Assembly: GCF_006345805.1 (NCBI RefSeq)
Contig: NC_043006.1
Span: 67,518,001-67,582,000 of the forward strand
DNA: 64,000 nt
Source of the DNA: Octopus sinensis
Taxonomy: Eukaryota
Direction: 5' to 3'
Shown: positions 2,794 to 55,259 of the stretch, piece after piece
Numbering within the stretch: the first letter of the stretch is position 1
Layout: each line of letters starts with the position of its first letter
Notes under the pieces: generated by a model
What the model was told of the DNA's origin: nothing
What the model saw: the letters and a program-made list of their open reading frames with translations, nothing else
Databases searched by the model: none
Made by a program: the position numbers and the translations under genes

Positions 2794-2985
2794 TATCCTT
2801 GTACATGTAAATATCGTTTTCCTTTGCGAAATATTGGTCAAAGTTAGCCAATAGAAATTATATTGTGCAATGAATATTGTTTTGTAGACTCGCAAGGTCC
2901 GATGTAATGTTTTTTTCTGATTTTAAATACAGTCGGATAATTTGTGATAGTATTTGCATATTCATTTTGGGTTTCTCTCTCTCCT

Positions 2986-3033
<48 letters not shown>

Positions 3034-3651
3034 TCTCTCCCGCTAACGAGTTTGCTGTAAGCCACAGATGTTTTCAATGCCTTTGATTTATTCTTTTAAT
3101 GCTAAAGCAAAGAATTAGTTTTCACATTTTGTTTGTGTTTTTAATCTAGGTTTACATGTAGGTCTGAGAAAGGTATCTGGTGGTGATGGAATGTGCTTGA
3201 AACAATAGCTAAATCTTCCTTAAATCACACACCTTTTCATTTGAAAATATTTTCTATTTTTTTTACTGGAAACACAAGACCCGGGAATTCACAGTGCACA
3301 TCAAGGCAACACAGCAGAACGGACAACCTTAGAATCACTAGGGCCATCCTCATACACTAAGACAAACCAATTATAAACAACAGGAGAGAGTTACAGGAAG
3401 CTAGCTGGTTGCTATAGCAACACATTTCCGTGCATATCCACTTCACAACGCTCACACACAAGCACATCGGCAACATTCGTTAATTTCTTGAAAATGGGGT
3501 CATAACCCCAAAATATTGACTACAAGGTAAGTCTACATTGATTCATATATTTGTTTTCTTGTGATTTGCCTTGCATTAACTTCGCATTGTTCTGGCCTTA
3601 CCCACAATCCTTTATACAATATATTCTATACAGTGCTTCAGAGTAATTATT

Positions 3652-5099: not shown

Positions 5100-6760
5100 C
5101 GGTCATTCTGACTACTTGGTTAAGATCCCGCTCTCCTTTCTTCTGGTTCAATCTACGGGTTCGTGCTCAGAACAAGACCATTCCCTCGGATCATCTTTGC
5201 CACTCCTTTTTCAGCTTTCAACTAATTTTCAAAGAAAGCAGCACTTCGCTTATTGCTCTTTTTGGGGTAACTTTCTCTCGCCCCATTTCAGGGTGTACAG
5301 CCCTCCCTGCTCGTTACTTCGTCCCAGTTTTATTTCTGCTTGTAGATCTGGACCGACCAATCCAAACACTGATTAATTTAACCGTTCCGTCCGTTCTGAC
5401 ATAGTTCTTCTAAATCCTAGTTCGCGTTGGATGCCCCTTCCCCACCTCAACGTTTCCAGTTTCCACAGCGGTAACCCCAGAGTCAGTACATACGTAAAAA
5501 AAACAGAGACCAATCTTAAAAGACCAAGTGCATAAAGATTAAAAGTTCCCATAGGTAATCATTCACTCTAACCATTAACCAGATGTCATTGTACACTGCA
5601 CGGGAGCCAGCCGCGGAACAGGGACCGAAACCAGCTGCCTTCAGGACAGTCTCCAAATAATGGTGGCGGATCCTATTGAAAGCTTTCGAATGATCTAAAC
5701 TAACCAAGGCCCCCACCCGTTTCATGTTCCTTAACCATTTCTGTGATGTATCTCATGAGGCTGAGGTTGTCGTGGATAAATTTGTTTGAGAGGACGCGTG
5801 TCTGCGCGTCACATCGACATTCAACGCCAACCTCTTTTCTAACACTTCAGCCAAAATTTTGAAAACCTGCATTCAGTAGAGTTATGGGCCGAATGTTGTC
5901 AATGTAATTCCCTTGTGTACATCCTTTTTCAACAGTGCCGCTTCTCCTCAACTTATAGAACGGGGGCTCCCATTTTGCTTTCAATTTCGGTAGATATCTG
6001 ATAAAGGGTCTCTAAACAAGTCTGGCTGCATGTAAAAGTGGAGATCGAAGAGCCGATCATCCACACCATGAAACTTGCTCGCAATGCGGCCAAACCATCG
6101 TTTCCTGCGTGTACGTGGCTGTTATCAGCTTTTCGCAACACTCCACCTCTCGTACCGAGAATCATGGCTAGCCGTCGAGACAGGCACTGAAATCCATTCT
6201 GCAAGATATGCACGATCATCTTTGTCCTGAATGGTAAGTTGATGGTTTTGGACGTGGACAGAAGCAAAGGTGGTTGGCACTACTGTAAAAGAATACGAGG
6301 CTGTGGCAGGAGCAGAAATTAACCAGGCGAAGTCTTTGGGCCTGCAAGTCTGAACCTGAGCAGGAAGATCCGCGCCATCCAACAGCATCGTAGAGCGCAG
6401 GGCAGAAGACTGATTAAATTACTCGCGGTTTGGTTTGGTTTGGCCCTGACCTCTAGGTGGATAAGAACTAGGAAGACTTGACGAACAACTTGAAGAATCT
6501 CGATGACAATCAACTATGTGGTTGTTTCCAAAGACATTCAGACCGTGATCCATGGATAATTTCCAGAATTCCATATCCTTCCTGGAGACATTACCAGTTC
6601 TGGATAAACTCTATAGGCATCGTAGTGCCGTCAGCTGGGCATGCTTGAAATGTGCGTAGAACGACGAAACTGACCTGCACACGTTCGAACAACGCTCGAG
6701 CATTGCCAGCTTATAAAATAATATCGAACAGCAATTGAGGACGGATCTGGGTATCGGTCA
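5100..6760 (-). mobile_element. Degenerate Tx1/L1-clade LINE ORF2 (end of endonuclease plus RT), with frameshifts and internal deletions
   Basis: Minus-strand peptides: NIRPITLL (RT domain 1-like), IHDNLSLMRYI, GALVSLDHSKAFNRIRHHYLETVLKAAGFGP (LDxxKAFDRV..L..GFG motif), GPDLQAE and WGERKL. The YADD region appears to be deleted. Confidence 0.85.
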
Positions 6761-8475: not shown

Positions 8476-9189
8476 TAAGTCGATTATATTGTCTGCCGTC
8501 TACGGGCAAAACAACGTCACAATGAAATGAAAAATTCAATATACATATATAATTCTAAAACAGTTAGTAATAAAACACCAGGTAGCTATACTATATTTAG
8601 ATGAGAAGAATAAGGAACAACACCGCCTGTTGTTTTTCTTATATAAGTCTTGGAATTGTGTTTACCGATTTTTAATTCCTTCATGTCATTATGTTTGCCT
8701 TTAGACTATAGACAATGCAAATTTACTTCATTCGGTGCCCTCGCCCCCACCCGCCCCACCCTTATAGGATATATTGTATTTCTGCTGTTGAGGTGATGGA
8801 GGTAGTGGCGACGGTGACGGGCAGTGATTGTGGCGGCGGCGGCGGAGATAGTAGTGTTGCTGCTACGGCTGCAGGTGATGGTGGTGGTGGTGGTGGTGGT
8901 GGTGGTGGTTCTTTACTTTCTGAATTTAATTCCCGTCAAGATCGACATTTGCCTTTCATCCCTTCGAGATCGATAAAATATCGTGCTTGTAATGGGCTGA
9001 GATCAATGATATCCTCTCACCGCCTCTTCTCTTCTCGCTGGCTTTGTGCACAAGTTGCAAATCATTATCATTGTTGTTGTTGATTCGGCTCTTTAGGTCC
9101 TGGGTTCAATCTCACCAAAGCCGACTTTATCTTGTAATCGTTGTTCTTGCTCCTGTTCTTATACTTGTTCCAGCTGGCGAACTGAACAA

Positions 9190-10111: not shown

Positions 10112-11370
10112 ATGGCAATGAAAAAAAGATAAGGTTTTGGAGTGGGAGATTATACCGCACAAAAAGTGGTTGAAAGACAGTGAAGATAGAACGGTGCTGT
10201 TGAGAACCTACTTCAAGTCACTCGACACCATCGCCCTATTCGAAAAGACAGCAATTGAAAAGGAGTTGGCAGAGTATTTGCCAACAATTAAATTCATTTC
10301 CAGGAGTGTCAAATACGCAACGGTGTGGTTGCTATTTGACACCCCTGAAATGACTCACAAATTTGCGAGTCAGCCCTTGGAGGGTGACGAAATTTTTTTT
10401 TCTCCCCACGTATTGTGGGAGGAGGTTGACGAAAGCTTGGGTCTGCGGGTTTCCACCCGGGAAAAAACCCGAGTGGATAGAGAAGAATATCCGCCGGGTT
10501 CTGGGTAGCAATGGGACCAAGCTTCTTAATGTGAAAGTTCTTCCTGCTGCTGATTGGGTTGGGTCAAAAGCTGTTTTGACCCTTTGGACCCAATCAGCCA
10601 ATCTGGTTTTTCCAGATTTTTTGAAAATGGCCGGGTGCAGGGACCCAGTGATTCTTGAGGGTCCCCCCCCCCCCAGGTGTCATTGGTGCCTGGAGTCCGG
10701 CCATATAAAGAAAAACTGTCCCCAGGAACAAAATAAGAGTTGTTGAGTGACACCTCTGTAGAAGAGGGAATGAAGGCGGCCGAGGAGGTGGAGGGCTCCT
10801 CAAACAGGGGCCGCCAGAGGATGAAGGTGAGCAACAATGGGTGCTCACCGAAGGATCCTAAGGATGAGGAGGGGAAGGCGAATCTCCCGGTCACGGAGGA
10901 GACTCACCCTTCCTCAGTTGAAAAGAAAAAAAAGAGGAAGAGAAACGGGACAATGCCGGCAGTCGGTGACGTAGTACCGGAATGTCCCGGAACTACGTCG
11001 GTTGGGGTTGTGCCACCGGCAGGAGAAGAAACACCATTGGCAGGAACTGTGCCGCCAACGGAAGAATTGGATATCCCACCCCCGGAGGAAGACGAATTAT
11101 TTGTCTTCTTCTATAGAGGCGGAGAGGTTGAAAAGGTGGTGGAAAAGCACCATAAGAGAGCACCTTTAGCCTTCACACAGGATCCTGAATAGCCTCCGCA
11201 GATAGCTGTGGAGGTCATAACGTTTGACGTGACGTTTAGGCTGAAGGGGCTCAATGAGGAATATCGCTTGTACCCGGGCGACGCCGACACGGAACCCGCT
11301 TCGATCTTGAATGAGGCGTGGAGGATGGCGGAGGATGCGGGCACAAGTGATGTTGAGGGTGAGTTATAAA
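10112..11370 (+). pseudogene. Tx1/L1-like LINE ORF1 (gag-like, with CCHC zinc knuckle), frameshifted
   Basis: Track ORFs 10137-10508, 10363-10746 and 10740-11192 join into one protein. The knuckle CHWCLESGHIKKNC (C-x2-C-x4-H-x4-C) is at 10678-10719. Removing one base from the A-run at 10121 restores MAMKKDKVLEW from the ATG at 10112. Confidence 0.75.
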
Positions 11371-12087: not shown

Positions 12088-12458
12088 AAGAAGCTTGCTT
12101 ACTAACCACATGATTCCGGGTTCAGACCCACTGCGTACCATCCTGGGCAAGTGTCTCCTACTATAGCCTCGCGCCGACCAAAGCCTTGTCAGTGGATTTG
12201 GTAGACGGAAACTGAGAGAAGCCCGTCGTGCATATGTCTGTGTCTGTGTGTGTGTTTGTGTGTATGTGTCTGTATTTGTTCCCCCACCATCGCTTAACAA
12301 CAGACGTTGGTGTGTTTACGTCCCCGTAAATTAGCTGTTCGGCAAAAAGAGCCCGATAGAATAAGTACTAGGCTTACAAAGAATAAGTCCTGGAGTCTTA
12401 TTTGACTAAAGGCAGTGCTCCAGCATCGCCGCAGTCACATGACTGAAATAAGTAAAAA
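12088..12458 (+). mobile_element. SINE family A
   Basis: Same head, microsatellite and tail as 240-672. Confidence 0.85.
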
Positions 12459-12641
12459 AGTTCAAGAATAAATACTTTTGAGTCAACTTAGCCGTTCATC
12501 CTTTCGAGATCAACATAATCGTCTCAAAAGTATTTGTAGAAATTTTCATTTTAAAATATCCATTTTTTTAAAAAACTTGGAGAAAATAAATTGAGGACGC
12601 CTTATATATATTTACTGAGCGCTTGGGTGCAATTAGACAGA

Positions 12642-13499
12642 TCCATATGGCCATATACCCAGGTTTATTCCCCCTTTTTTAGGGGAGGGTAGCCACAACA
12701 AGACACACACACACCAGGCATTCCATTTGTTTCCCAGCCCAAAGGGACGAGCCCCATTCTATGCTCGGATCAAGGCATAGAATGCAACCCCTAATATCAG
12801 CAGCGGGGCCCGACAGCATATGCTGGTTTACACTGCCGCATCATGCTGGTTCTGTACCCCTTTGGGCAACATCAAAATTCACTCATCCATTCACAAACAC
12901 TCTCCAAACTTTTCTATTGTTTATAAACTTCCTTGCCACTCTCACTCCAACACCTCTAACTACCAAAGCTCTCCTCACTCCATCCATCCTTCTCCTCATC
13001 ATCACACTCACTATCTCTCTCCTCTTTACCTCACTTGTACTACACCCACGCACATTCCATGACGCTAGTACTAGGATGAGATTCAGTGTTAACCTTTTCC
13101 CACCCCCTTGTCTTTTTCTTGCTGCCTTTTTAGGAATATAGACTTACTAGGAGGAGAGGATTCCCAGTCCCCTCGCTTCAGCCCATTTTAGTCGCCTTTT
13201 ACGCCACGCAAGGAATACGGCGACTGCATTCTACCGATCCCTCCACCCAGTCTCAGGGGGTGGGTTTGCTGGTTAACCCACAGCTGGGACCCTTACAGGT
13301 GCCACCACTCTGACACCTGTAAGGCACCTGGGAACAATAGGTCTACTCTGACACCAGAGTAGACATGGGAACAATAGTGGCTAAGAGGTGGTTCCAGACT
13401 TCTCAAACCCTGAAACCAGGGCCCAGGGGTCCCTCTACCGGATGTAGTTAATAGCCATACCCAGGACTGCTATTAGATAAATAAAGGATATATTTTAAA
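12642..13499 (-). mobile_element. Short internally deleted RTE-clade element (non-autonomous), flanked by an 11-bp direct repeat
   Basis: The minus frame 13143-12883 has no stop and fuses the APE start (LASWNVRGCSTSEVKRREIVSVMMRRRMD) to an RTE C-terminus (MDGVRRALVVRG...NRKVWRVFVNG*). AATTAGACAGA occurs at 12631-12641 and 13500-13510. Confidence 0.7.
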
Positions 13500-13760
13500 A
13501 ATTAGACAGAATAGGCGTGGCTATGTGGCAAGAAGTATGCCTCCCAACCACATAGTTCCAGGTCGTTGATTTGCTACGGATGACGAAGCGCAGGAAGTGG
13601 TACAATTCGCGACCAGCCAAAAACCTTCTTCTCCATGAACCGCTGGAAGAAGTTGTATCGAATAGCAGAGAGACTATGTCGATAAAAATGATGGAATTGT
13701 CCAACGCTTGCTTTTGTTTTAATAAATTACAAAAACAAGACTGCATATAATTTCTGACAT

Positions 13761-16149: not shown

Positions 16150-16575
16150 TATAGCCTTTTCTTTTATATTTTTGACTGCGGCCATGCTGGAGCACCGCCT
16201 TCAGTCGAACAAGTCGACTCCAGGACTAATTCTTTATAAGCCTAGTACTTATTCTATCGGACTTTTTTGTCGAACCGCTAAGTGACAGGGAATGTAAACG
16301 CACCGGCATCGGTTGTCAAGCGATGGTTGGTGGACAAACACCGACACATATACACACACACACACACACACATACATACATACATACATACATACATACA
16401 TACATACATACATACATACGACGGGCTTCTTTCTGTTTCCGCCTGCCAAATCCACTCACAAGACTTTGGTCGGCCCGAGGCTATAGTAGAAGACACTCTC
16501 CCAAGGTGCCATGCAATGGGACTGAACCCGGGAACATGTGGTTGGTAAGCAAGCTACTTACCACACAGCCACTCC
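16150..16575 (-). mobile_element. SINE family A
   Basis: Reverse complement of the family A layout. Confidence 0.85.
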
Positions 16576-19380: not shown

Positions 19381-20521
19381 ATGGGCTCCTGTTTATGCTG
19401 TCGTCGGTTGAATCCATCGCGGATCAATTCAGTTTCTAACCTCAGTCATTATTCGATCGCCTGTGGGCTTCTGAAATGTAGTAGAAACAGGAAAAGTGAG
19501 TTGAAAGGAGGAAGTAAAGACGGGTCTGATCAGTTGTGCAATTTGGATAATTCCGGAGACGCGGTGAACTTCACTGCAAATACAGCCACGAGTAGTGTTT
19601 CTAGTCGCACTGTCAGCGAAACAACGGTCGTTGCTGTGTCTTGTGGTAACGATACAAAGGATAAGGGCGATGGCCATGATGCTACCCACACTAAGGGCGA
19701 CCGCGATGAAAGAATCATATGTGATGATAAAATCAACGACAGAGAATCAGATGTGCTCAAAAAAGACATACTACGCGACCAAGAATCGACCATGTTACCG
19801 ACAGATGTCCTGTCGCAGTCGGAGAAAGCAGTCGGGGATGCCATATCTATCAACAGAAACACAGATACGCAGATGCAGCCAAAGACAAGCGGTCAAACCA
19901 AAGTTGAACCGAAAATCAATCTCGGCGATAGTTACGAAACGAATTGTGATACGAAAATTCCCCCCAAAGGTAGAGTAAATTTCATGACAAACAAAATAAA
20001 TAACTTTGTCGAAGACGTCATTCATATCATTAATTCGGGTGATGTTGTGAGTGTAAAGAACACTGTCGACAAACAAACAGCGCCGTCCGGTTCGGATGCA
20101 CAGAATGATATTGTAACCCAGCTACCGAACAATCCAGAATTGAATTCCTGTTTAAAGCATGAGACTGCATTAAAAGACTTTCTCCTTGGCCCAGATACAA
20201 ATAAAGATCTAGACAAGGAAATCAATCCAGATTTGGATACGATTTCTGCTTCTGATATATCTTTAGAAGACAATGATCAGAGAAACAGTGGTCAGAAGAA
20301 GAGAAATTTGGAAATTCTTGGCAACGACACCAAACTCTTCAGATCGAAAGAAACACCACGACTACAATTGTACCAACAACCTCAATTACAAGAGACACAA
20401 CAAATGCAACAACAACAGCGACTAAGCGATCCTTCAGATACGAAACGTCTTCTTTCACCGTCATTAGTTTCTCCACCATCGCCACCATTATCGATATTAC
20501 CAAAAACACCAACAAAAAACG

Positions 20522-20553
<32 letters not shown>

Positions 20554-21426
20554 ACAGAAACAACAACGGTGACAGGATCGAACGAAAGAACAGTAACAAC
20601 AACGCCACCCGTGTCGAAAATAACAACCAAAATATCTTCAAAAGCTACAAAGGCACCTGCGAAAACACAAACGTCAACAAATGAAATGGCGACCACATCG
20701 ATAACATCAGCAATAGCGGATGCAGTCAAAACTGCGGCGAGCAAAGCGGAAGCGGAAGCAAAAGCGATCGCTGAAAGTAACAGGAAAATAGAGAAGAGAT
20801 CGTTTGCCAAGTTACACGGGAAAGCTGATCTTGAGAAACAGACGACTGAGAAACCAACAAGGAAAGGCCCACGGAGGGGAGTGATAAAACTGAAAGAGGG
20901 TGGGAAGTATCAGAGAGAAGTCACTAAGCGGGAACATAGTGGTGGTAGTAGCGATGGTGGTGGTAATTGCGTTACCAATGGTGATATTAGTAATGGCATT
21001 CATAGTAGATATGATCATTTTGCTGGTGGCGGTGGTCTTCGTCGTATTGATGGGGGTGATAGTAGCAGTCGTAGTAACAGTACTAGTTGTAGTAGCAGCA
21101 GCAGTAGTAGTAGTAGTAGTGATAGTAGTAGTAGTAGTAGTAGCAGCAGCAGCAGCAGAACTACCACTTCCAGTTGTAGTGACTACAGTAGTGGCGGTAT
21201 TGGGGGGGTTAATCATCAAAGAGGTGTCAATGGTGACGATGTTTTGATTATCCGCAGTAGTAGGAGGAGTAGTAGTAATAGTAGTAGTAGAAGTGGTAGT
21301 AGTAGTAGTAATAGTAGTAGCAGCAGCAGCAGTAGTAGTGATGGTGGTGCTGGTAGTAGTAGAGTGGTTAAGCATGCTAGTTTTAGGAGTACCAAGCGTC
21401 GAAGTCGACAGGATGCCGGTGATGAC

Positions 21427-21506
<80 letters not shown>

Positions 21507-21615
21507 TAGTAGTGTAGTAGTAGTAAGGAAATTAAAAATAAAAGCAGTAGTAGTAGTAGTAGTTGTAGTAATAGTAGTGGTGGTGGTAGTAGTAGTAGTG
21601 GTGGTAGTAGTAGTG

Positions 21616-21648
<33 letters not shown>

Positions 21649-21945
21649 AGTGTAATAATAATAAAAGTAATAGTATTGATAGTATTAGTTGTGGCCTTTG
21701 TAGTAGTAGTAGTAGCAGTAGTAGTAGTGTTTGTAAAAGTAAAAAAATTAATTGTGTTAGTAGTGGTGGTGGTGGCGGCGGTGATGGCGGCGGCGACGGT
21801 GGTGGTGGTGGTGGTGACAATAGCAGTGGTGGCGGTGGTGACGGGGATCATGGCGGTAGTGGTGGTGAAGATGTTAGTAGTAGTGCTTTTGCTACACCGA
21901 CCAATACCTGTAGCACATGTAGCAGTAGTGACCATTGCGAGGAAG
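19381..21945 (+). CDS. Large coding exon of an uncharacterised low-complexity (Ser/Gly/Thr/Ala-rich) protein with an N-terminal MGSCLCC motif; probable 1-nt deletion at 21513/21514
   Basis: 711 codons without a stop from the ATG at 19381, about 520 of them non-repetitive, in AT-rich DNA. After the missing A the Ser/Gly frame stays open to 21995 and passes a consensus donor AAG|GTAAGG at 21945/21946. No known domain was recognised. Confidence 0.6.
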
Positions 21946-22092
21946 GTAAGGAAGAGGAGGTGGAGGTGGAGGTTGAGAAAAAGGCAGAGGGGTAGAAGGG
22001 TGGAAGGCTGAGATACCAATGCGAGTTTAGAAACACGGACAGTAAGGGCCAAAGTTGAAAATATGTATGTATACATATATGCACACATGTAT

Positions 22093-29447: not shown

Positions 29448-31055
29448 CTAGCAGAATTGCCTGGCGTTGCTCATGGCTGAATTGCTTGAAAGTACTGTTA
29501 ATGATTGCACTGAATTATGATGATTATTCAGGCAAATATTGATATAAGCTTACGGTGGGAGATAAGGACTTAACGATCAAACGTGTGCCATTGCATTGTT
29601 TTGGGGGGAACCAAATTTCTGATGAGCATTATAGGGGCACCAACTTAAGTTTGAGAAAGTGTGGTGGTAGTCCGGGTGCTCAAAGGAATTGAGTACCTCT
29701 ATTGGATAGTTGATGACGTCCTCTGGGTCAGGAGTTGTATCGATAGACTGATATACATAGACTTCCCCACGAATGAGTTTTAGCATTTCATCATTAATAT
29801 GGTGAACAGTTTTATTCCTCGGGGCCAGTATAGCCTTTTTGCCAATCCAATCCATATTCTGATAATTAGCTTGTAGATCTGAGAACACTGCATCTCTGAG
29901 ATCAGAAGGCGTCTTAACAATGTACAAATGGAATCGATGGCAATATTACCATTTTCATCCCCTGGTATTTTGCCTTCGCTAAGTGCAAGGAGGGTGTGAG
30001 GAAATGCTGCTGATGTGATATTACGTCGCATATGAGCACGCATATTGGTGTGAAGTTTGAGAGTTACTTCCCTTTGTTAAAAAAAATATGCATTAAAATT
30101 GAAAAAAATGATGGTAAATTATTTGTAAAATCATAGACTCATCGTAGACGCGCGCTAATACCCAGTATGGATTGAATGGTTACCTCTATGGAAATATATA
30201 CACGCACATTATACATACATGTGTGTATAGATGAATATATAAATACATTTAAATATCTATATACACTTTTGGGCGATCTTTCTGTTTCTTAGAGATAACT
30301 TTAGGTCTTATTTTCGTCCTAAAAAACTTTGTATGGAGTGAATGGTTACCTCTATGGAAATATATACACACACGTTATACATACATGTGTGCATAGATGA
30401 ATATATAAATACATTTATATATCTATATACACTTTTGGGCGATCTTTGTGCTACTTAGAGATAACTTTAGATCTTATTTTCGTCCTAAAAAAACTTTGTG
30501 CGGAGTGAATGGTTACGTGTATGGAAATATATACACACACATTATACATACATCTGTGTATAGATGAATATATAAATACATTTAAATATCTATATACACT
30601 TTTGGGCGATCTTTCTGCTACTTGGATATAGGTCTTATATTCGTCCTAAAAAACTTTCCTGTCACACACTCACGCACACGCACACACACACACACACGCA
30701 CCCTCACACACACACACACACGCACACACACACGTTAGCTTACAATTTTATTTATATATTTGCGTGTCTATGTGTGTAAAGAGGAAGTGGCAGAGTGAAA
30801 GAGTCACTCACTACAAGAAGTGAATTACTTTCACTTTATTCGTTGCACACTGTGTGTGTGCGTGTGCGTGTGGTGTAGGCCACACTAAGAGAAGCATTTG
30901 ACTCATACACCACAATGTGAGTTTTCTCTGAATTTTGTTTAATTGGGGTTGCAATTTTAAAAAGTGGACCTGGCACGACCCGATGCATTCTACTCTTAAA
31001 AATGCTAGGTAAATGTAATTGAAGAAATCCTATATTGTAGATTTCTATAATATTA
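29448..31055 (-). mobile_element. Non-autonomous composite Helitron, copy 1 (Pif1 helicase fragment plus 166-bp tandem repeats)
   Basis: 3' end (minus) ...GAGCAACGCCAGGCAATTCTGCTAG|T at 29448. Frameshifted helicase (KKAILAPRNKTVHHIN, YPIEVLNS). Homologous to 42976-45124. Confidence 0.85.
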
Positions 31056-35200: not shown

Positions 35201-35294
35201 TAGAGAAAGAACCGGTTTCTAACCTAGATCCAAAGCTCCTTCATTGGAATTTCAACATCAACAACAGGGTATTTTCGTTTGTTTGCATGTACTC

Positions 35295-35725
35295 TTTTAC
35301 TCTTTTACTTGTTTCAGTCATTTGACTGCGGCCATGCTGGAGCACCGCCTATAGTCGAGCAAATCGACCCCCGGGCTTATTCTTTGTAAGCCTAGTACTT
35401 ATTCTATCGGTCTTTTTTTGCCGAACCGCTAAGGTACGCGGAGGTAAACACAACAGCATCGGTTGTCAAGCAATGTTAGGGGACAAACACAGACACACAA
35501 ACATACACACACACACACACACAGATACACACACACACACACACATACATATATATATATACGACGGGATTCTTTCAGTTTCCGTCTACCAAATCCACTC
35601 ATAAGGCTTTGGTCGGCCCGCGGCTATAGTAAAAGACACTTGCTCAAGGTGTCAAGCAGTGGGACTGAACCCGGAACTATGTGGTTGGTAAGCAAGCTAC
35701 TTACCACACAGACACTCCAGCGCCT
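35295..35725 (-). mobile_element. SINE family A
   Basis: Full family A layout on the minus strand. Confidence 0.85.
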
Positions 35726-41760: not shown

Positions 41761-43924
41761 GTTAGAAATCCCCATCTTAAAAGGTGTCGTTGTTAGGGCC
41801 AAAGACTCACTTTGACAAGTCTACTCTCATTCTTTTATGTATCTGTCTTCCTCCGTCACTCACTCTTTCCTCCCTTCCCATCACTTTCTATATATAACGT
41901 CGTTTAACAGTGTCTAACTCCCCTTCACTTTCTCTTTATAACGTCGTCAAACAGCGTTCTTTATCTCCCCCTCCCCGCCTTCGACAGCGCTTTCACACGC
42001 TCTCTCTCTCTACGTCTGTCTGCATTCATAGAGAGAATTATCATCGCCACAACCACAACCACATCTTCATGAGAACAAATATTATGAATTAGATATTTAT
42101 TGGGTTAATTTATATGTGTGTGTGTGTGTGTTTGTGTGTGTTCTATATATAAATATGTATATATAATGTATATATACAAAGTGTATATATCTGTATTTAT
42201 GTATATTAAACTTTTTAATACTTTTTTGATAGTTATATATATTTTTTTTAAATTATAAATATAAATTAATAATTTTAATTTAAAATTTTAATAATTTTAA
42301 TTTAAGAAATTTCTCATTTTTACGTTTTTTTGCCTTCTATTTTTTTTGTTGTTTACAGTTTTCATTTTTTCTGAAAGAAATTTACAGCTGCATGTAGCCC
42401 GTGTTTAGAGCTTTCATTTGCATGGTCAATCGTCGAAAAATTCCCAAAATAAGTACTAAATTTAACAAAAAAATCCTTTTTCTTCCTTATTTTTAATTGC
42501 TCAAATAGTGCCACGTACAAAAGACAAGTGTGCTTTCCGTCGTCACTGCCTGATATTTATGATTGATCTTTCAAAATATTTTCTTTCTCAACTTGCTCAA
42601 GATCTTTTGTTTTTTATAAATGGGAGAGAGATAGATAGACAAAGATAGAGCGTAAGAGAAAGCGAGGAAGTGTCCGAGAGAAGGGAAGAGTAAGAGAGTG
42701 GGAAAGTGAGAGAGAAAGGAGAGAGAAACAAAGAGGGAGAATGTGGCGATAAGAAACAGAAAGTAACAACCACACCCTCACCCGAGGATAGAGCGGGTCA
42801 CCTTAAGCTAATTATCTCTATTTTGTTAAATATATATAAACCCCGGTTTATCTAATTACCTTACAGTTGAATATTAAATATAACATTCAATACTTATAAC
42901 AGTTAATAAACCAGTAAATTCATTGAATTTTATTATCTCTTAAACAGGTGTTGAACCTTTAATTAAACTTATATATCTCTTATTATAAAAGGCAGATTTT
43001 ATCTGCCTCCCTTTGTCTCTTATAGAAATCTACAATATAGGATTTCTTCAATTACAATTTACCTAGCATTTTTAAGAGTAGAATACATCGGGTCGTGCCA
43101 GGTACAGTTTTTCAAATTTCACCCCCAATTAAGCAAAATTTCGAGAAAACTCACATTGTGGTGTGTAAGTGAAGTGCTTTTCTTAGTGTGGGCTACAGCA
43201 CACACACACACACACACACACACCACACACACACACAAACGGAGCGAAATGCTTCACTCATGCTATCACCCTAACTTCTCCTCCTTTCTCTTTGCAAGTG
43301 TGCAACGATTAAAGTGGAAGTATTTATATAAAACGAGAGAAGTGTACCTTAAACCACTACTCAAAAAAAAAACACAGCAAACAGAAACAAATAAATACAT
43401 AACGATTTACTCCTCACACAATTTCTTCAATTAGAGTTTACCTATGATTTTTCAAAGTACTTCCATTCGGTCATGGCATACAAAATTTCTTTCAATTTCA
43501 CCCCCATATTACTCCCACTTCCTATTTAAACACAGATACGCAAATATATAAATAAAATTGTAAGCTAACGTGTGTGTGTGGTGTGTGTGTGCGTGTGTGT
43601 GTGTGTGCGTGTGTGTGTGTGTGAGGGTGCGTGTGTGTCTGTGTGTGCGTGTGTGTGAGTGTGTGACAGGGATGAGCCAGTCAGACTGGTCATCCTTTTT
43701 GCTAGAAGATCACCTATGGTCTTTTATGCTACACCACTGGTTTTTAGTTCATATTAATCAAATTAATATTCACAACGAGAAGGACTATTCATTATAATAC
43801 ATCAGTTCCACACATTTACCCTGGTTCCATTTCGGACAACTGCACAAACATTTGCCATTTCACACATGTATGTAAACAAATTCCTTTCTTAAAAATTTCA
43901 ATTCATTTTCTTTTTCAATTCATA

Positions 43925-44275
43925 CAAATTTTTTTAGGACGAAATTAAGATCTAAAGTTATCTCTAAGTAGCACAAAGATCGCCCAAAAGTGTATATAGA
44001 TATATAAATGTATTTATATATTCATCTATGCACACATGTATGTATAACGTGTGTGTATATATTTCCATAGAGGTAACCATTCACTCCATACAAATTTTTT
44101 TAGGACGAAATTAAGATCTAAAGTTATCTCTAAGTAGCACAAAGATCGCCCAAAAGTGTATATAGATATTTAAATGTATTTATATATTCATCTATACACA
44201 CATGTATGTATAATGTGCGTGCATATATTTCCATAGAGGTAACCATTCAATCCATACAAAGTTTTTTAGGACGAA
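43925..44275. repeat. 166-bp tandem repeat (about 2.2 units) inside the Helitron
   Basis: AGGACGAAA starts at 43936, 44102 and 44268. The same unit appears on the reverse strand at 30315, 30481 and 30642. Confidence 0.9.
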
Positions 44276-44526
44276 AATATTTATATATAAAAGAAAGGTT
44301 GTGTGTCTGTCTACTCCGATTTAGATTCCTAACTACTCCCACATTTTGCGATGCAGTTTAACCAAAACCGGGTATCTTATAGTCGTGATTCATATTGAGC
44401 CCTTCTGGGTATTAGCGCGCGTCTACGATGAGTCTACGATTTTACAAATAATTTACCATCATTTTTTTCCATTTTAATGCATATTTCTTTAAATAAAGGG
44501 AAGTAACTCTCAAACTTCACACCAAT

Positions 44527-45048
44527 ATGCGTGCTCATATGCGACGTAATATCACATCAGCAGCATTTCCTCACACCCTCCTTGCACTTGGCGAAGGCAA
44601 AATACCAGGGGATGAAAATGGTAATATTGCCATCGATTCCATTTGTACCATTGTTAAGACACCTTCTGATCTCAGAGATGCAGTGTTCCCAGATCTACAA
44701 GCTAATTATCAGAATATGGATTGGATTGGCAAAAAGGCTATACTGGCCCCGAGGAATAAAACTGTTCACCATATTAATGATGAAATGCTAAAACTCATTC
44801 CTGGGGAAGTCTATGTATATCAGTCTATCGATACAACTCCTGACCCAGAGGACGTCATCAACTATCCAATAGAGGTACTCAATTCCTTTGAGCACCCCAG
44901 ACTACCACCACACTTTCTCAAACTTAAAGTTGGTGCCCCTATAATGCTCATCAAAAATTTGGTTCCCCAAAAACAATGCAATGGCACACGTTTGATCGTT
45001 AAGTCCTTATCTCCCACCGTAAACTTATATCAATATTTGCCTGAATAA
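44527..45048 (+). pseudogene. Helitron RepHel Pif1-family helicase fragment
   Basis: KKAILAPRNKTVHHIN, YPIEVLNSFEHPRLPPHFLKLKVGAPIMLIKNL and CNGTRLIVKSL are typical SF1B/Pif1 Helitron motifs. The fragment lies inside Helitron termini and is truncated at both ends. Confidence 0.9.
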
Positions 45049-46353: not shown

Positions 46354-46913
46354 CCATTTTGCCTCCGGGCCAAGCGAGTTTTTCAGTATTCTTAATCTCT
46401 CTGCCAAGCAAAGCTTACGACATTTGCTCTCGTTTATATAAGTCCTCGGTTGTTAAAGAAGCTTCCATGTAATTGAGTGAGTTGCACTCCAATGTTGTTG
46501 ACTGTGTTTTAGTTAAAGCTACGGTTTTAAAATCTGCCCAGATATACCACTCTTTGGTATTTCCCATTGACAACGGCTAAAGAGCTAGAAATACGTTTGG
46601 GAATCCGATAGGAAGTAGCACTGAGCAGATATGGGGTTTTTACACTTTTTACCATAAGAGTGAATTTTTTCCTCCCACAGTAATTGCAGTGAATTTGCCT
46701 TTAAAAGTTGAAATATATCACACATTTTGACTAACCTAGAGTTTGCTTATGCCTAAACACTGCTTGACGCCGATACTGCTGTATATATATATATACACAC
46801 ACACACATATATACACACACACACGCATATATGCACACATATACATGTGTGTATGTGTGTGTGTGTCTGTATATGTATATGTGCATGTAGACATGTATAT
46901 ATATATATATATA

Positions 46914-47740
46914 CGTCTGCGCTGGTATGGGCATGTGACGAGAATGGGTGAAGATAGTTGTGTGCAAAAGTGCCGCACTCTAGCAGTTGAGGGAACCTGT
47001 GGAAGAGGTAGACCCAGGAAAACCTGGGACGAGGTAGTGAAGCACGACCTTCGAACTTTAGGTCTCACCAAGGAAATGACTAGAGACCGAGACCTATGGA
47101 AGTATGCTGTGCGTGAGAAGACCCGGCAAGACCAGTGAGAACAGTCAAAATCAAACCAAATCAACATCAGTGGAAATTGCAGCTATGGTTAAGCGAACCA
47201 TCTGATCGTTTGTCCGTTGCCAGCCTCGCCTGGCCCCCGTGCCGTTGGCACGTAAAAGCACCATCCGCTCATGTCCGTTGCCAGCTTCACCTGGCCCCCG
47301 TGCCGGTAGCACGTAAAAGCAGCATCCGTTCGTGTCCATTGCCAGCCTCGCCTGGCCCCCGTGCCGGTAGCACGTAAAAGCAGCATCCGTTCGTGTCCGT
47401 TGCCAGCCTCGCCTGGCCCCCGTGCCGGTAGCACGTAAAAGCAGCATCCGTTCGTGTCCGTTGCCAGCCTCGCATGGCCCCCGTGCCGGTAGCACGTAAA
47501 AGCACCATCCGTTCGTGGCCGTTTGCCAGCTTTGTCTGGCACCTGTGCAGGTGGCACGTAAAAAGCACCCACTACACTCACGGAGTGGTTGGCGTTAGGA
47601 AGGGCATCCAGCCGTAGAAACACTGCCAAATCTGACTGGGCCTGATGAAGCCTCCCGGCTTCACAGACCCAGTTAAACTGTCCAAACCATGCTAGCATGG
47701 AAAACGGACGCTAAATGATGATGATGATGATGATGATGAT
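46914..47740 (+). mobile_element. 5'-truncated RTE-clade LINE (ORF C-terminus, 3'UTR with 61-bp tandem repeats, (GAT)n tail)
   Basis: RLRWYGHVTRMGEDSCVQKCRTLAVEGTCGRGRPRKTWDEVVKHDLRTLGL...DRDLWKYAVREKTRQDQ*. Confidence 0.9.
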
Positions 47741-47922: not shown

Positions 47923-49548
47923 GTCATTGCCAGTGCCGCCCCGACTGCATCCGTGCCAGTGACACGTAAAAAGCACCATCCTATCGTGGCCGTTGCCAGC
48001 CTGGCCTGGCCCCCGTGCTGGTGGCACGTAAAAAGCACCATCCGATCGTGGCCGTTGCCAGCCTCGCCTGGCCCCCGTGCCGTTGGCACGTAAAAGCACC
48101 ATCCGCTCGTGTCCGTTGCCAGCTTCGCCTGGCCCCCGTGCCGGTAGCACGTAAAAGCACCATCCGTTCGTGTCCGTTGCCAGCCTCGCTTGGCCCCCGT
48201 GCCGGTAGCACGTAAAAGCACCATCCGTTCGTGTCCGTTGCCAGCCTCGCCTGGCCCCCGTGCCGGTAGCACGTAAAAGCACCATCTGTTCGTGTCCGTT
48301 GCCAGCCTCGCCTGGACCCCGTGCCGTAGCACGTAAAAGCACCATCCGTTCGTGGCCGTTTGCCAGCTTTGTCTGGCACTGTGCAGGTGGCACGTAAAAA
48401 GCACCACTACCTACACTCACGGAGTGGTTGCGTTAGGAAGGGCATCCAGCCGTAGAAACACTGCCAAATCTGACTGGGCCTGATGAAGCCTCCCGGCTTC
48501 ACAGCCCCAGTTAAACCGTCCAACCCATGCTAGCATGGAAAACGGACGCTAAATGATGATGATGATGATGATGATGATATATATATATGTGGATCTATTT
48601 ATAAGTGCATGTATATATTTTGTATGAGGATAACTATATGTATGCATGTATGTGTATGTATATTATATGTATGTGTGTGTGTATATATATATACATATAG
48701 TGCGTGTGTATGTATGTATATATAATGTGTGTGTGTGTGTGTGTGTGTGTGTGGTCATTGCCAGTTGCCGCCCCGATGCATCCGTGCCAGTGACACGTAA
48801 AAAGCACCATCCTATCGTGGCCGTTGCCAGCCTGGCCTGGCCCCCGTCTGGTGGCACGTAAAAGCACCATCCGATCGTGGCCGTTGCCAGCCTCGCCTGG
48901 CCCCCGTGCCGTTGGCACGTAAAAGCACCATCCGCTCGTGTCCGTTGCCAGCTTCGCCTGGCCCCCATGCCGGTAGCACGTAAAAGCACCATCCGTTCGT
49001 GTCCGTTGCCAGCCTCGCTTGGCCCCCGTGCCGGTAGCACGTAAAAGCACCATCCGTTCGTGTCCGTTGCCAGCCTCGCCTGGCCCCCGTGCCGGTAGCA
49101 CGTAAAAGCACCATCTGTTCGTGTCCGTTGCCAGCCTCGCCTGGCCCCCGTGCCGGTAGCACGTAAAAGCACCATCCGTTCGTGGCCGTTTGCCAGCTTT
49201 GTCTGGCACCTGTGCAGGTGGCACGTAAAAAGCACCCACTACACTCACGGAGTGGTTGGCGTTAGGAAGGGCATCCAGCCGTAGAAACACTGCCAAATCT
49301 GACTGGGCCTGATGAAGCCTCCCGCTTCACAGACCCCAGTTAAACCGTCCAACCCATGCTAGCATGAAAACGGACGCTAAATGATGATGATGATGATGAT
49401 GATGATATATATATATGTGGATCTATTTATATAAGTGCATGTTTATATTTATGTGTATGAGGATAACTATATGTATGCATGTATGTGTATGTATATTATA
49501 TATATGTGTGTGTATATATATATATATTTATGTGCGTGTGTATGTATG

Positions 49549-50399: not shown

Positions 50400-50975
50400 C
50401 TCTTTTTTCTTTTAATAGTTTCAGTCATTTGACTGTGGCCATGCTGGAGCACCGCTTTTAGTCGAAGAAATCGACCCCAGGACTTATTCTTTGCAAGCTT
50501 AGTACTTATTCTATCGGTCACCTTTGCCGAACCGCTAAGTTACGGTGACGTAAACACATCAGCATCGGTTGTCAAGCGATGTTGGGGGGATAAACAGAGA
50601 CACAAACATATATACACAAACACATACACACACATATATTGGCACGTAAAAAGCACCCACTACACTCACGGAGTGGTTGGCGTTAGGAAGGGCATCCAGC
50701 TGTAGAAACATTGCCAGATAAGACCAGAGCCTGGTGCAGCCTTCTGGCTTCCCAGATCCCCGGTCGAACCGTCCAACCCATGCTAGCATGGAGAACAGAC
50801 GTTAAACGATGATGATGATGATGATGATGATATATACATATATACAATGGGCTTCTTTCAGTTTCCGTCTACCAAATCCACTAACAAGGCTTTGGTCCAC
50901 CCGAGGCTATAGTAGAAGACACTTGCTCAAGGTGCACGCAGTGGGACTGAACCAGGAACCATGTGGTTCGTAATG
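50400..50975 (-). mobile_element. SINE family A with an RTE-tail element (50640-50832, +) nested in its microsatellite
   Basis: Family A tail, then the RTE tail in opposite orientation, then the family A head. Confidence 0.8.
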
Positions 50976-52394: not shown

Positions 52395-52800
52395 TCTCTT
52401 TTACTCTTTTACTCTTTTACTTGTTTCAGTCATTTGACTGCGGCCATGCTGGAGCACCGCCTTTAGTCAAGCAAATTGACCCCGGGACTTATTCTTTGTA
52501 AGCCCAGTACTTATTCTATCGGTCTCTTTTGCCGAACCGCTAAGTGACGGGGATGTAAACACACCAGCATCGGTTGTCAAGCAATGCTAGGGGGACAAAC
52601 ACACACACACACACAGATATATATATATATACATATACGACAGGCTTCTTTCAGTTTCCGTCTACCAAATCCACTCACAAGGCACTGGTCAGCCCGGGGC
52701 TATAGCAGAAGACACTTGCCCAAGATGCCACGCAGTGGGATTGAACCCGGAACCATGTATTTGGTTAGCAAGCTACTTACCACACAGCCACTCCTGCGCC
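52395..52800 (-). mobile_element. SINE family A
   Basis: Full family A layout on the minus strand. Confidence 0.85.
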
Positions 52801-55255: not shown

Positions 55256-55259
55256 CAAA

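What the first reader, a model, noticed from the sequence alone, without database searches (positions are those of the whole stretch)
12642..13499. 858-bp mini-RTE: endonuclease start fused in frame to the ORF C-terminus, apparently mobilised as a unit
Seen: the minus frame 13143-12883 reads ...LVLASWNVRGCSTSEVKRREIVSVMMRRR-MD-GVRRALVVRG...NRKVWRVFVNG*. The first half is an APE N-terminus (WNVRG, normally followed by ...RRMDVLALSETK). The second half is an RTE C-terminus (GWMDGV..AL...RNxxxWR..V). The join falls at ATGGATG (about 12987-12981), a plausible microhomology, implying loss of nearly the whole ORF. An 11-bp direct repeat, AATTAGACAGA, flanks the unit (12631-12641 and 13500-13510) like a TSD. 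Established precedent: R2 short internally deleted elements (SIDEs) and bipartite RTE-derived SINEs. Inference: this is a non-autonomous RTE 'SIDE' family that I do not recognise as described. The ORF track missed it because there is no start codon.
Basis: partly seen in the sequence, partly recalled or inferred. Interest (0 to 1): 0.7.

Follow-up and report, generated by a model that had tools for sequence, protein, structure and literature searches.

The report
Internally deleted RTE retrotransposon copy
This 858-bp stretch is a gutted copy of an RTE-type jumping gene that kept only its two ends, a well-known kind of non-autonomous element, so it is a real but ordinary feature whose status as a multiplying family could not be tested here.

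Summary
Window 12642-13499 (minus strand) has an open 86-codon frame that joins an APE-endonuclease start (…SWNVRGCS…MMRRRMD) to an RTE C-terminal tail (DGVRRAL…NRKVWRVFVNG*). It is flanked by the exact 11-mer AATTAGACAGA.

Relatives found in public assemblies show that both halves, plus the 5' and 3' UTRs, belong to one RTE lineage. In a full-length ~3.4-kb relative they map to the first ~270 nt and the last ~400 nt. That element carries GGATGGATG at both sites, and the window junction is a crossover in this 9-mer.

So this is an internally deleted, "bipartite" non-autonomous RTE. The kind is already described as common for the RTE clade (Bov-A, RTESINE1/2, WALLSI3; PMC5786205, PMC7245038).

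"Mobilised as a unit / a family" is not shown. No second copy with this junction could be searched for, because no octopus genome is available to the tools. The 11-mer alone arises by chance in about 9% of shuffles.

In the related genome, eight deletion variants all have different junctions and are single-copy. That points to recurrent deletion more than to an amplifying mini-family.

A weak hit to an HDV-like ribozyme model in the 5' UTR was not supported.

Verdict: a new member of a known kind, of low to moderate interest.

The parts
13500..13510 (-). Upstream (5') copy of the putative 11-bp target-site duplication. It reads TCTGTCTAATT on the element's strand.
   Evidence: One of two exact copies in the window. 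It abuts the element's 5' end.
12642..13499 (-). The whole 858-bp internally deleted (bipartite) RTE copy.
   Evidence: The 5' part is homologous to L003-L005 and to L001/L013, and the 3' part to L001/L013. It is 48% G+C against 38% for the window.
13144..13499 (-). 5' UTR (356 nt). It is significantly structured as RNA and contains a 38-nt tandem duplication (13305-13342 / 13343-13380).
   Evidence: Fold z-score -3.5, with 0 of 100 shuffles as stable. Repeats D4 and D9. Homology to the L003 5' region starts near GGGTATG (13462).
13147..13220 (-). 5'-UTR block conserved across all relatives (…CGTATTCC.TGCGTG.CGTAAAAGGCGACTAAAA…GCGAGGGGACTGGGAATCC.CTCCTC). It includes the hairpin GAGGGG (13174-13169) / CCUCUC (13159-13154).
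   Evidence: Alignments. There is a compensatory change in L006 (GAGAG/CUCUU).
12990..13143 (-). Remnant of the ORF start: the leader plus the first ~38 residues of the APE endonuclease (…LVLASWNVRGCSTSEVKRREIVSVMMRR).
   Evidence: 50% identity to residues 4-41 of the L013 full-length ORF. 56-63% identity to P0003, which continues into the APE.
12981..12989 (-). Deletion junction: the 9-nt microhomology GGATGGATG (codons R-M-D / W-M-D).
   Evidence: blastn homology to L003 stops at element position 517. The full-length L015 has GGATGGATG exactly twice, in the APE (RMDV) and in the tail (WMDGV).
12883..12980 (-). Remnant of the ORF end: the last ~32 codons (GVRRAL…NRKVWRVFVNG) plus the stop at 12885-12883.
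   Evidence: 42% identity to the last 31 residues before the stop of the L013 ORF. Translation.
12642..12882 (-). 3' UTR (241 nt), with a terminal C-run/G-run hairpin (about 12670-12689) and a short tail …GGTATATGGCCATATGGA.
   Evidence: The last ~70 nt align with the 3' termini of L013, L001, L010 and L011 (…CCCCCC-loop-GGGGGAA..GGTATATAGATAGAT). Homology ends at the repeat boundary. The overall fold is not exceptional, z = -1.5.
12631..12641 (-). Downstream (3') copy of the putative 11-bp target-site duplication.
   Evidence: Exact copy. It abuts the element's 3' end.

Best explanation
Window 12642-13499 (minus strand) is a non-autonomous, internally deleted ('bipartite') copy of an RTE-clade non-LTR retrotransposon.

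What it keeps: the 5' UTR, about 50 codons of the ORF start (including the first ~38 residues of the APE endonuclease), the last ~32 codons plus the stop, and the 3' UTR with its terminal hairpin and short tail.

What it lacks: the rest of the endonuclease and the whole reverse transcriptase, about 2.7 kb by analogy with a full-length relative.

The join lies in GGATGGATG. This 9-mer occurs once near the ORF start (R-M-D-V) and once near the ORF end (W-M-D-G-V) in full-length relatives. The deletion is therefore a crossover between these two short direct repeats, and it happens to preserve the reading frame.

The copy was placed in the genome by target-primed reverse transcription, leaving an 11-bp target-site duplication. 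It encodes no enzyme. It could move again only if an autonomous RTE supplied protein in trans that recognises its 3' end.

Shown here: the anatomy, the homology of each part, the microhomology, and the 3' terminus.

Inferred: the insertion mechanism, trans-dependence, and the timing of the deletion. My estimates for timing are:
- About 45%: the deletion arose in the RNA or during reverse transcription, as a one-off or low-copy event.
- About 30%: this is a copy of an established mini-family.
- About 20-25%: the deletion happened in the DNA after a full-length copy had inserted.
For: - Translation and repeat coordinates.
- An exhaustive HMMER scan and a profile search found short ORFs that span the same join, and ORFs that continue the same N-terminus into a canonical APE.
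- DNA homology to L003 stops at the junction.
- In assembly ERZ25072293, seven copies of a ~650-bp mini-element (six spanning the junction, one a 3'-only fragment) map to nt 1-~270 and ~2985-3384 of a 3384-bp full-length element with APE and RVT_1 pieces (L013).
- Each half of the window peptide matches the corresponding end of that element.
- The 3' termini are homologous, and homology ends at the window's repeat boundary.
- GGATGGATG is present at both sites in the full-length L015.
- An 11-bp duplication is in the typical RTE range (PMC6007223).
- Bipartite non-autonomous RTEs are a documented, common outcome of internal deletion (PMC5786205, PMC7245038).
Against: - No second copy in the window, and no copy with the same junction in any searchable collection.
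- The 11-mer bracket occurs by chance in about 9% of shuffles. No empty site could be examined.
- The autonomous parent from the window's own genome was not recovered. The closest 5' relative (L003) is only 75-83% identical.
- The 5' boundary is corroborated only to within about 20-40 nt.
- Assignment of the lineage to the RTE clade rests on architecture (single APE+RT ORF, ~3.4 kb, microsatellite-like tail, C-terminal motif). It does not rest on an RT phylogeny.
Confidence: 0.88

Rival explanations
1. The unit is one copy of an established, amplifying mini-RTE family (SIDE-like) whose master already carried this junction. Many loci in the genome would then share the identical junction and have different target-site duplications.
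For: - Bipartite non-autonomous RTE families are common (PMC5786205).
- The copy has apparently complete ends and a perfect 11-bp duplication.
- The same architecture occurs at several unrelated loci in another genome, with a constant 3' end and 5'-truncated copies.
Against: - No second copy with this junction was found, though the source genome could not be searched.
- In the related genome none of the eight deletion variants shares a junction with another, and every mini-ORF cluster has one member. The autonomous N-terminal clusters have up to 291 members. That is the opposite of what an amplifying family predicts.
Confidence: 0.3
2. A full-length RTE inserted here with its 11-bp duplication. 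It later lost ~2.7 kb in the chromosome by slippage or microhomology-mediated end joining between the two GGATGGATG repeats. The mini form was never an RNA and never moved.
For: - A 9-bp direct repeat at the junction is what DNA-level microhomology deletion leaves.
- A target-site duplication is equally expected under this scenario.
- The junction is known from a single locus.
Against: - In the related genome, six of eight independent deletions concentrate in the same two narrow zones using 0-3 nt of microhomology. That is hard to get from random chromosomal deletions.
- One such copy (L009) is also 5'-truncated, though it does not show when its deletion arose.
Confidence: 0.22
3. The mini form is a retro-copy of a spliced RTE transcript (analogous to spliced L1 insertions), with the junction being an exon-exon join.
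For: The junction is precise and in frame. The left breakpoint is nearly the same in several variants.
Against: - In full-length relatives the sequence after the left break is GATGTA/GAAGTG, and the sequence before the right break is …GGTGGATG. There is no GT…AG at any register compatible with the junctions.
- Six different joins within a few tens of nt are not what splice sites give.
Confidence: 0.03
4. There is no real element. The peptide resemblance and the 11-mer are chance, or the locus is an assembly collapse.
For: The halves are short, Pfam finds nothing, and the 11-mer bracket has about a 9% chance rate.
Against: - There is significant DNA and protein homology of four separate parts (5' UTR, ORF start, ORF end, 3' end) to the same element family, in the right order and orientation.
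- A 9-bp repeat cannot collapse a modern assembly.
Confidence: 0.02

Closest known systems
Bipartite non-autonomous RTE-type LINEs (Bov-A unit of Bov-A2/Bov-tA, RTESINE1, RTESINE2, WALLSI3, MAR4_MD), as reviewed by Kojima 2018 (PMC5786205) and 2020 (PMC7245038)
   Same: - Only the 5' and 3' parts of an autonomous RTE are present, created by internal deletion.
- The extreme 3' end with a microsatellite-like tail is retained.
- There is no Pol III head, and the element depends on the autonomous RTE.
   Different: - The published examples are defined as multi-copy families, and are mostly described as 5'-UTR plus 3'-UTR.
- This copy also keeps ~50 + ~32 codons of the ORF, fused in frame.
- Its copy number is unknown.
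Mini-elements of the related RTE lineage in ENA assembly ERZ25072293 (loci L001, L007, L009-L012; ORFs P0001, P0005-P0008, P0012)
   Same: - Same architecture, same lineage, homologous UTR blocks and 3' terminus.
- The left breakpoint is within a few nt of the window's, and the right breakpoint within ~20 nt.
   Different: - About 50% amino-acid and ~71% nucleotide identity, and a different host genome.
- None uses the GGATGGATG crossover.
- The 5' UTR is much shorter (~150 nt against 356 nt).
R2 SIDEs (short internally deleted elements; Eickbush & Eickbush 2012, as cited in PMC5786205)
   Same: Internally deleted non-autonomous derivatives of a non-LTR element that keep both ends.
   Different: - SIDEs derive from R2, sit in 28S rDNA, and depend on a 5' HDV-like ribozyme.
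- This unit is not R2 and is not in rDNA, and a ribozyme was not supported.
RIME/Ingi, NARTc/L1Tc and Vingi deletion derivatives (as cited in PMC5786205)
   Same: Non-autonomous elements consisting of the 5' and 3' parts of their autonomous LINE.
   Different: Different LINE clades and hosts, and established high-copy families.

Membership tests
RTE-clade non-LTR retrotransposon (as a derivative) | ORF begins with an APE-type endonuclease. | tested here: met
   Only a remnant is present. Residues 17-54 match the N-terminus of ORFs that continue into Pfam Exo_endo_phos (P0029 and P0082 carry PF03372; L013).
RTE-clade non-LTR retrotransposon (as a derivative) | Reverse transcriptase domain whose phylogeny places it in the RTE clade. 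| not testable with these tools
   The RT is deleted in the window copy. The relatives L013 and L015 carry RVT_1, but no clade phylogeny was made. The RTE assignment rests on architecture and the C-terminal motif.
RTE-clade non-LTR retrotransposon (as a derivative) | 3' end without poly(A), ending in a short microsatellite-like repeat, with short target-site duplications (7-15 bp, mode 10-12). | tested here: met
   The window ends …GGTATATGGCCATATGGA, and relatives end …GGTATATAGATAGAT(AGAT). The repeat is 11 bp. The range is from PMC6007223. The T-stretch about 10 nt upstream reported there is not evident.
Bipartite non-autonomous LINE (Kojima 2018) | Consists solely of the 5' part and the 3' part of one autonomous LINE. 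| tested here: met
   The mapping is by homology to the relatives L003 (5' part) and L013/L001 (both parts). The parent from the same genome was not recovered.
Bipartite non-autonomous LINE (Kojima 2018) | Retains the extreme 5' end of the parent. | tested here: inconclusive
   Homology to the L003 5' region begins at or near GGGTATG (13462), possibly at TATTTAT (about 13481). The repeat-defined start is 13499.
Bipartite non-autonomous LINE (Kojima 2018) | A multi-copy family: several loci with the same junction and different flanks. | not testable with these tools
   No collection available here holds the source genome. In the related genome the test was possible and not met: eight variants with eight junctions, each single-copy.
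R2 SIDE | Derived from R2, inserted in 28S rDNA, with a 5' HDV-like self-cleaving ribozyme. | tested here: not met
   The coding remnants are APE/RTE-type and the flanks are SINE and unique DNA. The only ribozyme signal is 15.4 bits against a 38-bit gathering score, and it is absent in relatives.
SINE | 5' head derived from tRNA, 5S or 7SL RNA with a Pol III promoter. | tested here: not met
   ARAGORN finds no tRNA in the window. Rfam finds no small-RNA head in the unit.
HDV-like ribozyme (drz-Agam-2 type, known in RTE 5' UTRs) | Nested double pseudoknot (P1, P1.1, P2, P3, P4) with a catalytic C, and a score above Rfam's gathering threshold. | tested here: not met
   There is a partial match to model positions 124-165 of 191 only. 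My own descriptor gives candidates in 29 of 30 shuffles and none in L013. No hit in L001, L003, L006 or L014.

The most novel reading that the evidence does not exclude
In this RTE lineage, internal deletions are not rare accidents but a recurrent, position-biased by-product of reverse transcription. The enzyme repeatedly jumps from a G-rich zone ~110-135 nt before the stop codon to a G-rich zone ~110-160 nt after the ORF start. Each jump produces a new ~0.65-0.86-kb mini-element with an in-frame mini-ORF. If so, it would give a concrete mechanism for why the RTE clade in particular spawns bipartite non-autonomous elements and SINE bodies, which Kojima 2018 lists as happening 'for unknown reasons'. 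The window copy would be one such event in a second host genome.
Probability: 0.2. Interest if true: 0.5.

Novelty: new member of a known kind. Interest (0 to 1): 0.25.

Why it matters
For annotation, the unit should be labelled as a non-autonomous RTE deletion derivative, not as a gene or a novel class. Its open 86-codon frame has no start codon and is not evidence of a protein.

More broadly, bipartite RTE derivatives are thought to be the raw material for the bodies of many SINEs, including the cephalopod 'Ceph-domain' (PMC5786205). A catalogue of such derivatives in cephalopod genomes is therefore useful.

The one observation with wider potential comes from the related genome, not the window. 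Eight independent deletion junctions were found there, six of them packed into two short zones. That pattern hints at a mechanistic hot spot for generating these elements.

Tried and rejected
1. **Indexed protein searches** with the 86-aa peptide and with the antisense 126-aa ORF that spans the junction found nothing. Exact-sequence look-ups of the window's ORFs found nothing. Pfam on the peptide found nothing.
2. **Second copy or paralogous empty site in the window:** none. The left flank holds a SINE copy ending ~170 bp away, and the right flank has only a 50-nt SINE-head match.
3. **JGI metagenome scan with the profile** gave one N-terminal relative only (L014).
4. **Octopus RTE sequences in paper supplements:** the stored parts contain no match to the element's words. 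Run and assembly accessions are not traceable in the literature, so the host species of the relatives, and the 'octopus' origin of the window, remain unverified.
5. **HDV-like ribozyme in the 5' UTR:** the Rfam hit is partial and sub-threshold, my own descriptor is non-specific, and relatives show no hit. Rejected as unsupported.
6. **L001 and L002 (also L007 and L008) as independent insertions:** rejected. L001 and L002 are 99.4% identical over 8.2 kb, so they are haplotypes. L007 and L008 look the same, from matching gene calls and near-identical mini copies.
7. **Breakpoint zones as each other's best sequence partner, or as complementary:** not supported (rank ~32 of 638; duplex energy within the null).
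8. **G-quadruplex propensity as the cause of the hot spot:** both zones are in the top ~4% but are not the top peaks, and they fall below usual thresholds. Suggestive only.
9. **In-frame bias of deletions** (8 of 8): cannot be trusted because the search was ORF-based. The one candidate out-of-frame locus tested (P0025/L015) was a full-length copy with a stop codon.
10. **Splicing as the origin of the junction:** no GT…AG is compatible with the joins.

Full report

Yes.
- On the minus strand, 13143..12883 is an uninterrupted 86-codon frame ending in TGA at 12885-12883. It reads VYIPKK…LVLASWNVRGCSTSEVKRREIVSVMMRRRMDGVRRALVVRGVGVRVARKFINNRKVWRVFVNG*.
- ATGGATG is at 12987-12981.
- AATTAGACAGA occurs exactly twice in the 64-kb window, at 12631-12641 and 13500-13510. 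Five further sites differ by one mismatch, where 1.8 matches of either kind are expected by chance.
- The 858 bp between the two copies is 48% G+C in a 38% window and has no other copy in the window.
- The window is plainly eukaryotic: microsatellites, many copies of a SINE-like repeat, and LINE and Helitron fragments. I could not verify that it is octopus.

How much is the 11-mer worth on its own? Not much.
- An exact 11-mer with one copy within 700 bp on each side of the coding remnant appears in 469 of 5000 shuffles (about 9%).
- Non-low-complexity 11-mers bracket 88 of 204 sliding positions in the real, repeat-rich window.

**2. What are the parts?**

Indexed protein searches with the peptide or with the antisense ORF across the junction found nothing. 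An exhaustive HMMER scan of 1.84 billion representatives gave three short ORFs, and a profile built from them gave 155. They fall into two classes.

The first class continues the same N-terminus into a canonical APE endonuclease:
- P0003: …LVLSSWNVRGCSTSEVKSAMMKRRMEVLTLRES.
- P0002: …SLNVRGCSSNEAKRREIDELFVRRKFDVLALNETKLKG.
- P0032: …GRRGMDVLALCETKMKGKGEV… for 198 aa, a cluster of 291 sequences.
- Some members carry Pfam Exo_endo_phos.

At the DNA level, the Logan contigs that encode P0003 (L003-L005) share the window element's 5' UTR and ORF start at 75-83% identity. The homology stops at element position 517, which is the junction. Beyond that point, L003 runs on into a decayed APE.

The second class is itself a fusion of the APE start to the C-terminal tail, for example P0001: …SLNVRGCSLIESKRSEIGCMFGRRGM·PRFGWMDGVKRALNDRRMDIREASERARNRNEWRMIVTQF*.

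All members of this class come from one ENA assembly, ERZ25072293. Its contigs have 2-7x coverage and look like host DNA of an unidentified animal. There I recovered six mini loci with unrelated flanks:
- L001 (L002 is its haplotype, 99.4% identical over 8.2 kb).
- L007 (L008 is its haplotype).
- L009, L010, L011 and L012.

L007 also carries a separate 3'-only fragment. Their shared features:
- The shared unit is ~650 bp at 90-98% identity.
- It starts at TATGCCCTGTGGTG and always ends …GGTATATAGATAGAT.
- L009 is 5'-truncated by 120 nt.
- L001 and L007 have plausible 7-bp and 10-bp target-site duplications.

Two full-length copies were also recovered: L013 5852-9235 (3384 bp) and L015. Both have APE pieces, RVT_1 pieces and the tail …RWFGHVERM…GRPRFGW(K/M)DGVKRALNDRRMDIRE.SERARNRNEWRMIVTQF*.

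Every mini copy maps to L013 as 5852→6110-6161 plus 8834-8858→9235, so ~2.7 kb is missing.

The window peptide's two halves match the two ends of that ORF separately:
- Residues 17-54 match L013 residues 4-41 (50% identity).
- Residues 54-84 match the last 31 residues before the stop (42% identity).
- The shared 'D' sits at the join.

The last ~70 nt of the window element align with the 3' termini of L013, L001, L010 and L011: …GGCTACCC(T)CCCC–loop–GGGGGAA…GGTATAT…. The similarity ends within a few bases of 12642. The 3' boundary defined by the 11-mer is therefore independently corroborated. The 5' boundary is corroborated only to within ~20-40 nt.

So four separate parts (5' UTR, ORF start, ORF end, 3' end) are homologous to one element lineage, in the right order and orientation. 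The refutation condition that 'the two halves match different LINE families' is not met, as far as relatives can show.

**3. The junction**

In full-length relatives the left site reads …AGGAGGGGGATGGATGTATTGG… (R-G-M-D-V-L). The right site reads …TTTGGGTGGATGGATGGAGTAAAG… (F-G-W-M-D-G-V). L015 contains GGATGGATG exactly twice in 9.3 kb, at these two sites.

The window junction, AGAAGGATGGATGGAGTG, is exactly a crossover within that 9-mer.

The missing start codon is a point difference. L003 has ATG where the window has AAG. The more distant family has no in-frame ATG either, so the open frame should not be read as a gene.

**4. Was it 'mobilised as a unit'?**

This is where the interpretation outruns the evidence. 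A duplication flanking a deleted copy is expected in three cases:
- (a) A mini master RNA was copied.
- (b) The reverse transcriptase jumped while copying a full-length RNA in this one event.
- (c) A full-length insertion was later deleted in the chromosome between the two 9-mers.

Only other loci with the same junction can separate (a) from the rest, and no tool here reaches the source genome.

The related genome gives an informative proxy.
- Among 121 retrieved ORFs there are eight deletion variants: P0001, P0005, P0006, P0007, P0008, P0012, P0058 and P0081.
- All eight have different junctions, and every one is a one-member cluster. Autonomous N-terminal clusters have 15-291 members.
- One mini (L010, 'KRCEIG') derives from a different subfamily than the others ('KRSEIG'), so there were at least two origins.

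That pattern fits recurrent deletion much better than a successful mini-family. I therefore put (a) at about 0.3, (b) at about 0.45 and (c) at about 0.2-0.25 for the window copy.

**5. A possible hot spot**

Six of the eight junctions fall in a 45-nt left zone and a 25-nt right zone of a 3.4-kb element. A ninth ORF (P0107) also loses homology in the left zone. I tested three explanations:
- The two zones are not each other's best sequence match (rank ~32 of 638).
- They are not unusually complementary.
- Their G-run density is high (top ~4%) but not unique.

All eight joins are in frame, but the search was ORF-based. The one candidate out-of-frame locus I could test turned out to be a full-length copy with a stop. 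The clustering is real enough to note, but it remains unexplained.

**6. Ribozyme lead**

Rfam gave a weak sense-strand hit to drz-agam-2-2, an HDV-like ribozyme family, at 13242-13289 (15.4 bits against a gathering score of 38). Self-cleaving ribozymes have been predicted at the 5' ends of several RTE families (Ruminski et al. 2011, as cited in PMC5786205). The lead did not hold up:
- It covers only model positions 124-165.
- An explicit double-pseudoknot descriptor is non-specific (29 of 30 shuffles hit) and finds nothing in L013.
- No relative gives any ribozyme hit.

The 5' UTR is nevertheless significantly structured (z = -3.5). It contains a block conserved across all relatives, with a hairpin that shows one compensatory change.

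**7. Comparison with what is known**

- RTE is named among only four clades that make them (RTE, Ingi, Vingi, R2).
- Examples are Bov-A, RTESINE1/2, WALLSI3 and MAR4_MD.
- They usually keep the extreme 5' end.
- An RTE 5' fragment contributes to the cephalopod 'Ceph-domain' of SINEs.

[quoted passage not shown] The window unit fits this kind. It is not an R2 SIDE, and it is not a SINE (no Pol III head).

It differs from most described examples in two ways. It keeps about 80 codons of ORF fused in frame, and its copy number is unknown.

**8. Verdict**

It is right on anatomy, origin and microhomology. Mobilisation as a family is unproven. It is wrong on novelty of the kind.
- It is a new member of a known kind. 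Interest is about 0.25.
- The most novel reading not excluded is a mechanistic deletion hot spot in this RTE lineage (probability about 0.2).

Noticed in passing
window 13305-13380 (minus strand): There is a 38-nt tandem duplication inside the element's 5' UTR (units about 13343-13380 and 13305-13342, each ending in a strong hairpin). The closest relative, L003, has a single unit.
   Followed up: partly
window 13147-13220 (minus strand); L001, L013, L006, L014, L003: A 5'-UTR block just upstream of the ORF is conserved across all relatives, including distant ones from freshwater and JGI metagenomes. It includes the hairpin GAGGGG/CCUCUC (13174-13154), with a compensatory change in L006. Its function is unknown.
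   Followed up: partly
window 13242-13289 (minus strand): A weak Rfam match to the HDV-like ribozyme family drz-agam-2-2 (15.4 bits, gathering 38). Neither a descriptor search nor the relatives support it.
   Followed up: yes
ENA assembly ERZ25072293: L001, L007, L009-L013, L015; proteins P0058, P0081, P0107: The related RTE lineage shows eight different internal-deletion variants, each with a unique junction. Six of them break in the same two short zones. P0107 loses homology in the same left zone. The reason for the clustering is unexplained.
   Followed up: partly
window 12088-12473, 261-667, 16173-16559, 35287-35702, 52400-52778, 50410-50637 and others: A ~400-bp SINE-like repeat is present in more than ten copies (74-86% identical). 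One copy ends ~170 bp from the insertion site.
   Followed up: no
window 44527-45048 (+) and 29577-29927 (-); tandem arrays 43914-44276 and 30165-30657: Two near-identical Pif1-helicase fragments (Pfam Pif1_2B_dom, E=1e-14) lie in opposite orientation. Each sits next to a 166-bp tandem array with reverse-complementary units. They look like two inverted copies of a Helitron-like element.
   Followed up: no
window 47211-47569, 47951-48406, 48782-49236; 54282-55259: There are three arrays of a 61-bp G+C-rich satellite (91% matches) and one array with a ~332-bp period. They produce long spurious ORFs on both strands.
   Followed up: no
window 46743-47138 (+): The C-terminal tail of another LINE (…RWYGHVTRM…GRGRPRKTWDEVVKHDL…DRDLWKYAV). 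It has the same motif pattern as the tail in the finding but is not homologous at the DNA level.
   Followed up: no
window 10137-11192 (+): Overlapping ORFs include a CCHC zinc-knuckle-like motif (CHWCLESGHIKKNC). This may be a retroelement gag/ORF1 remnant. There is no Pfam hit.
   Followed up: no
window 19381-22011 (+); about 27.1 kb: An 876-codon ORF starts MGSCLCC and runs into coding microsatellites, with no Pfam hit on its first 506 residues. Separately, there is a 100-N assembly gap near 27.1 kb.
   Followed up: no
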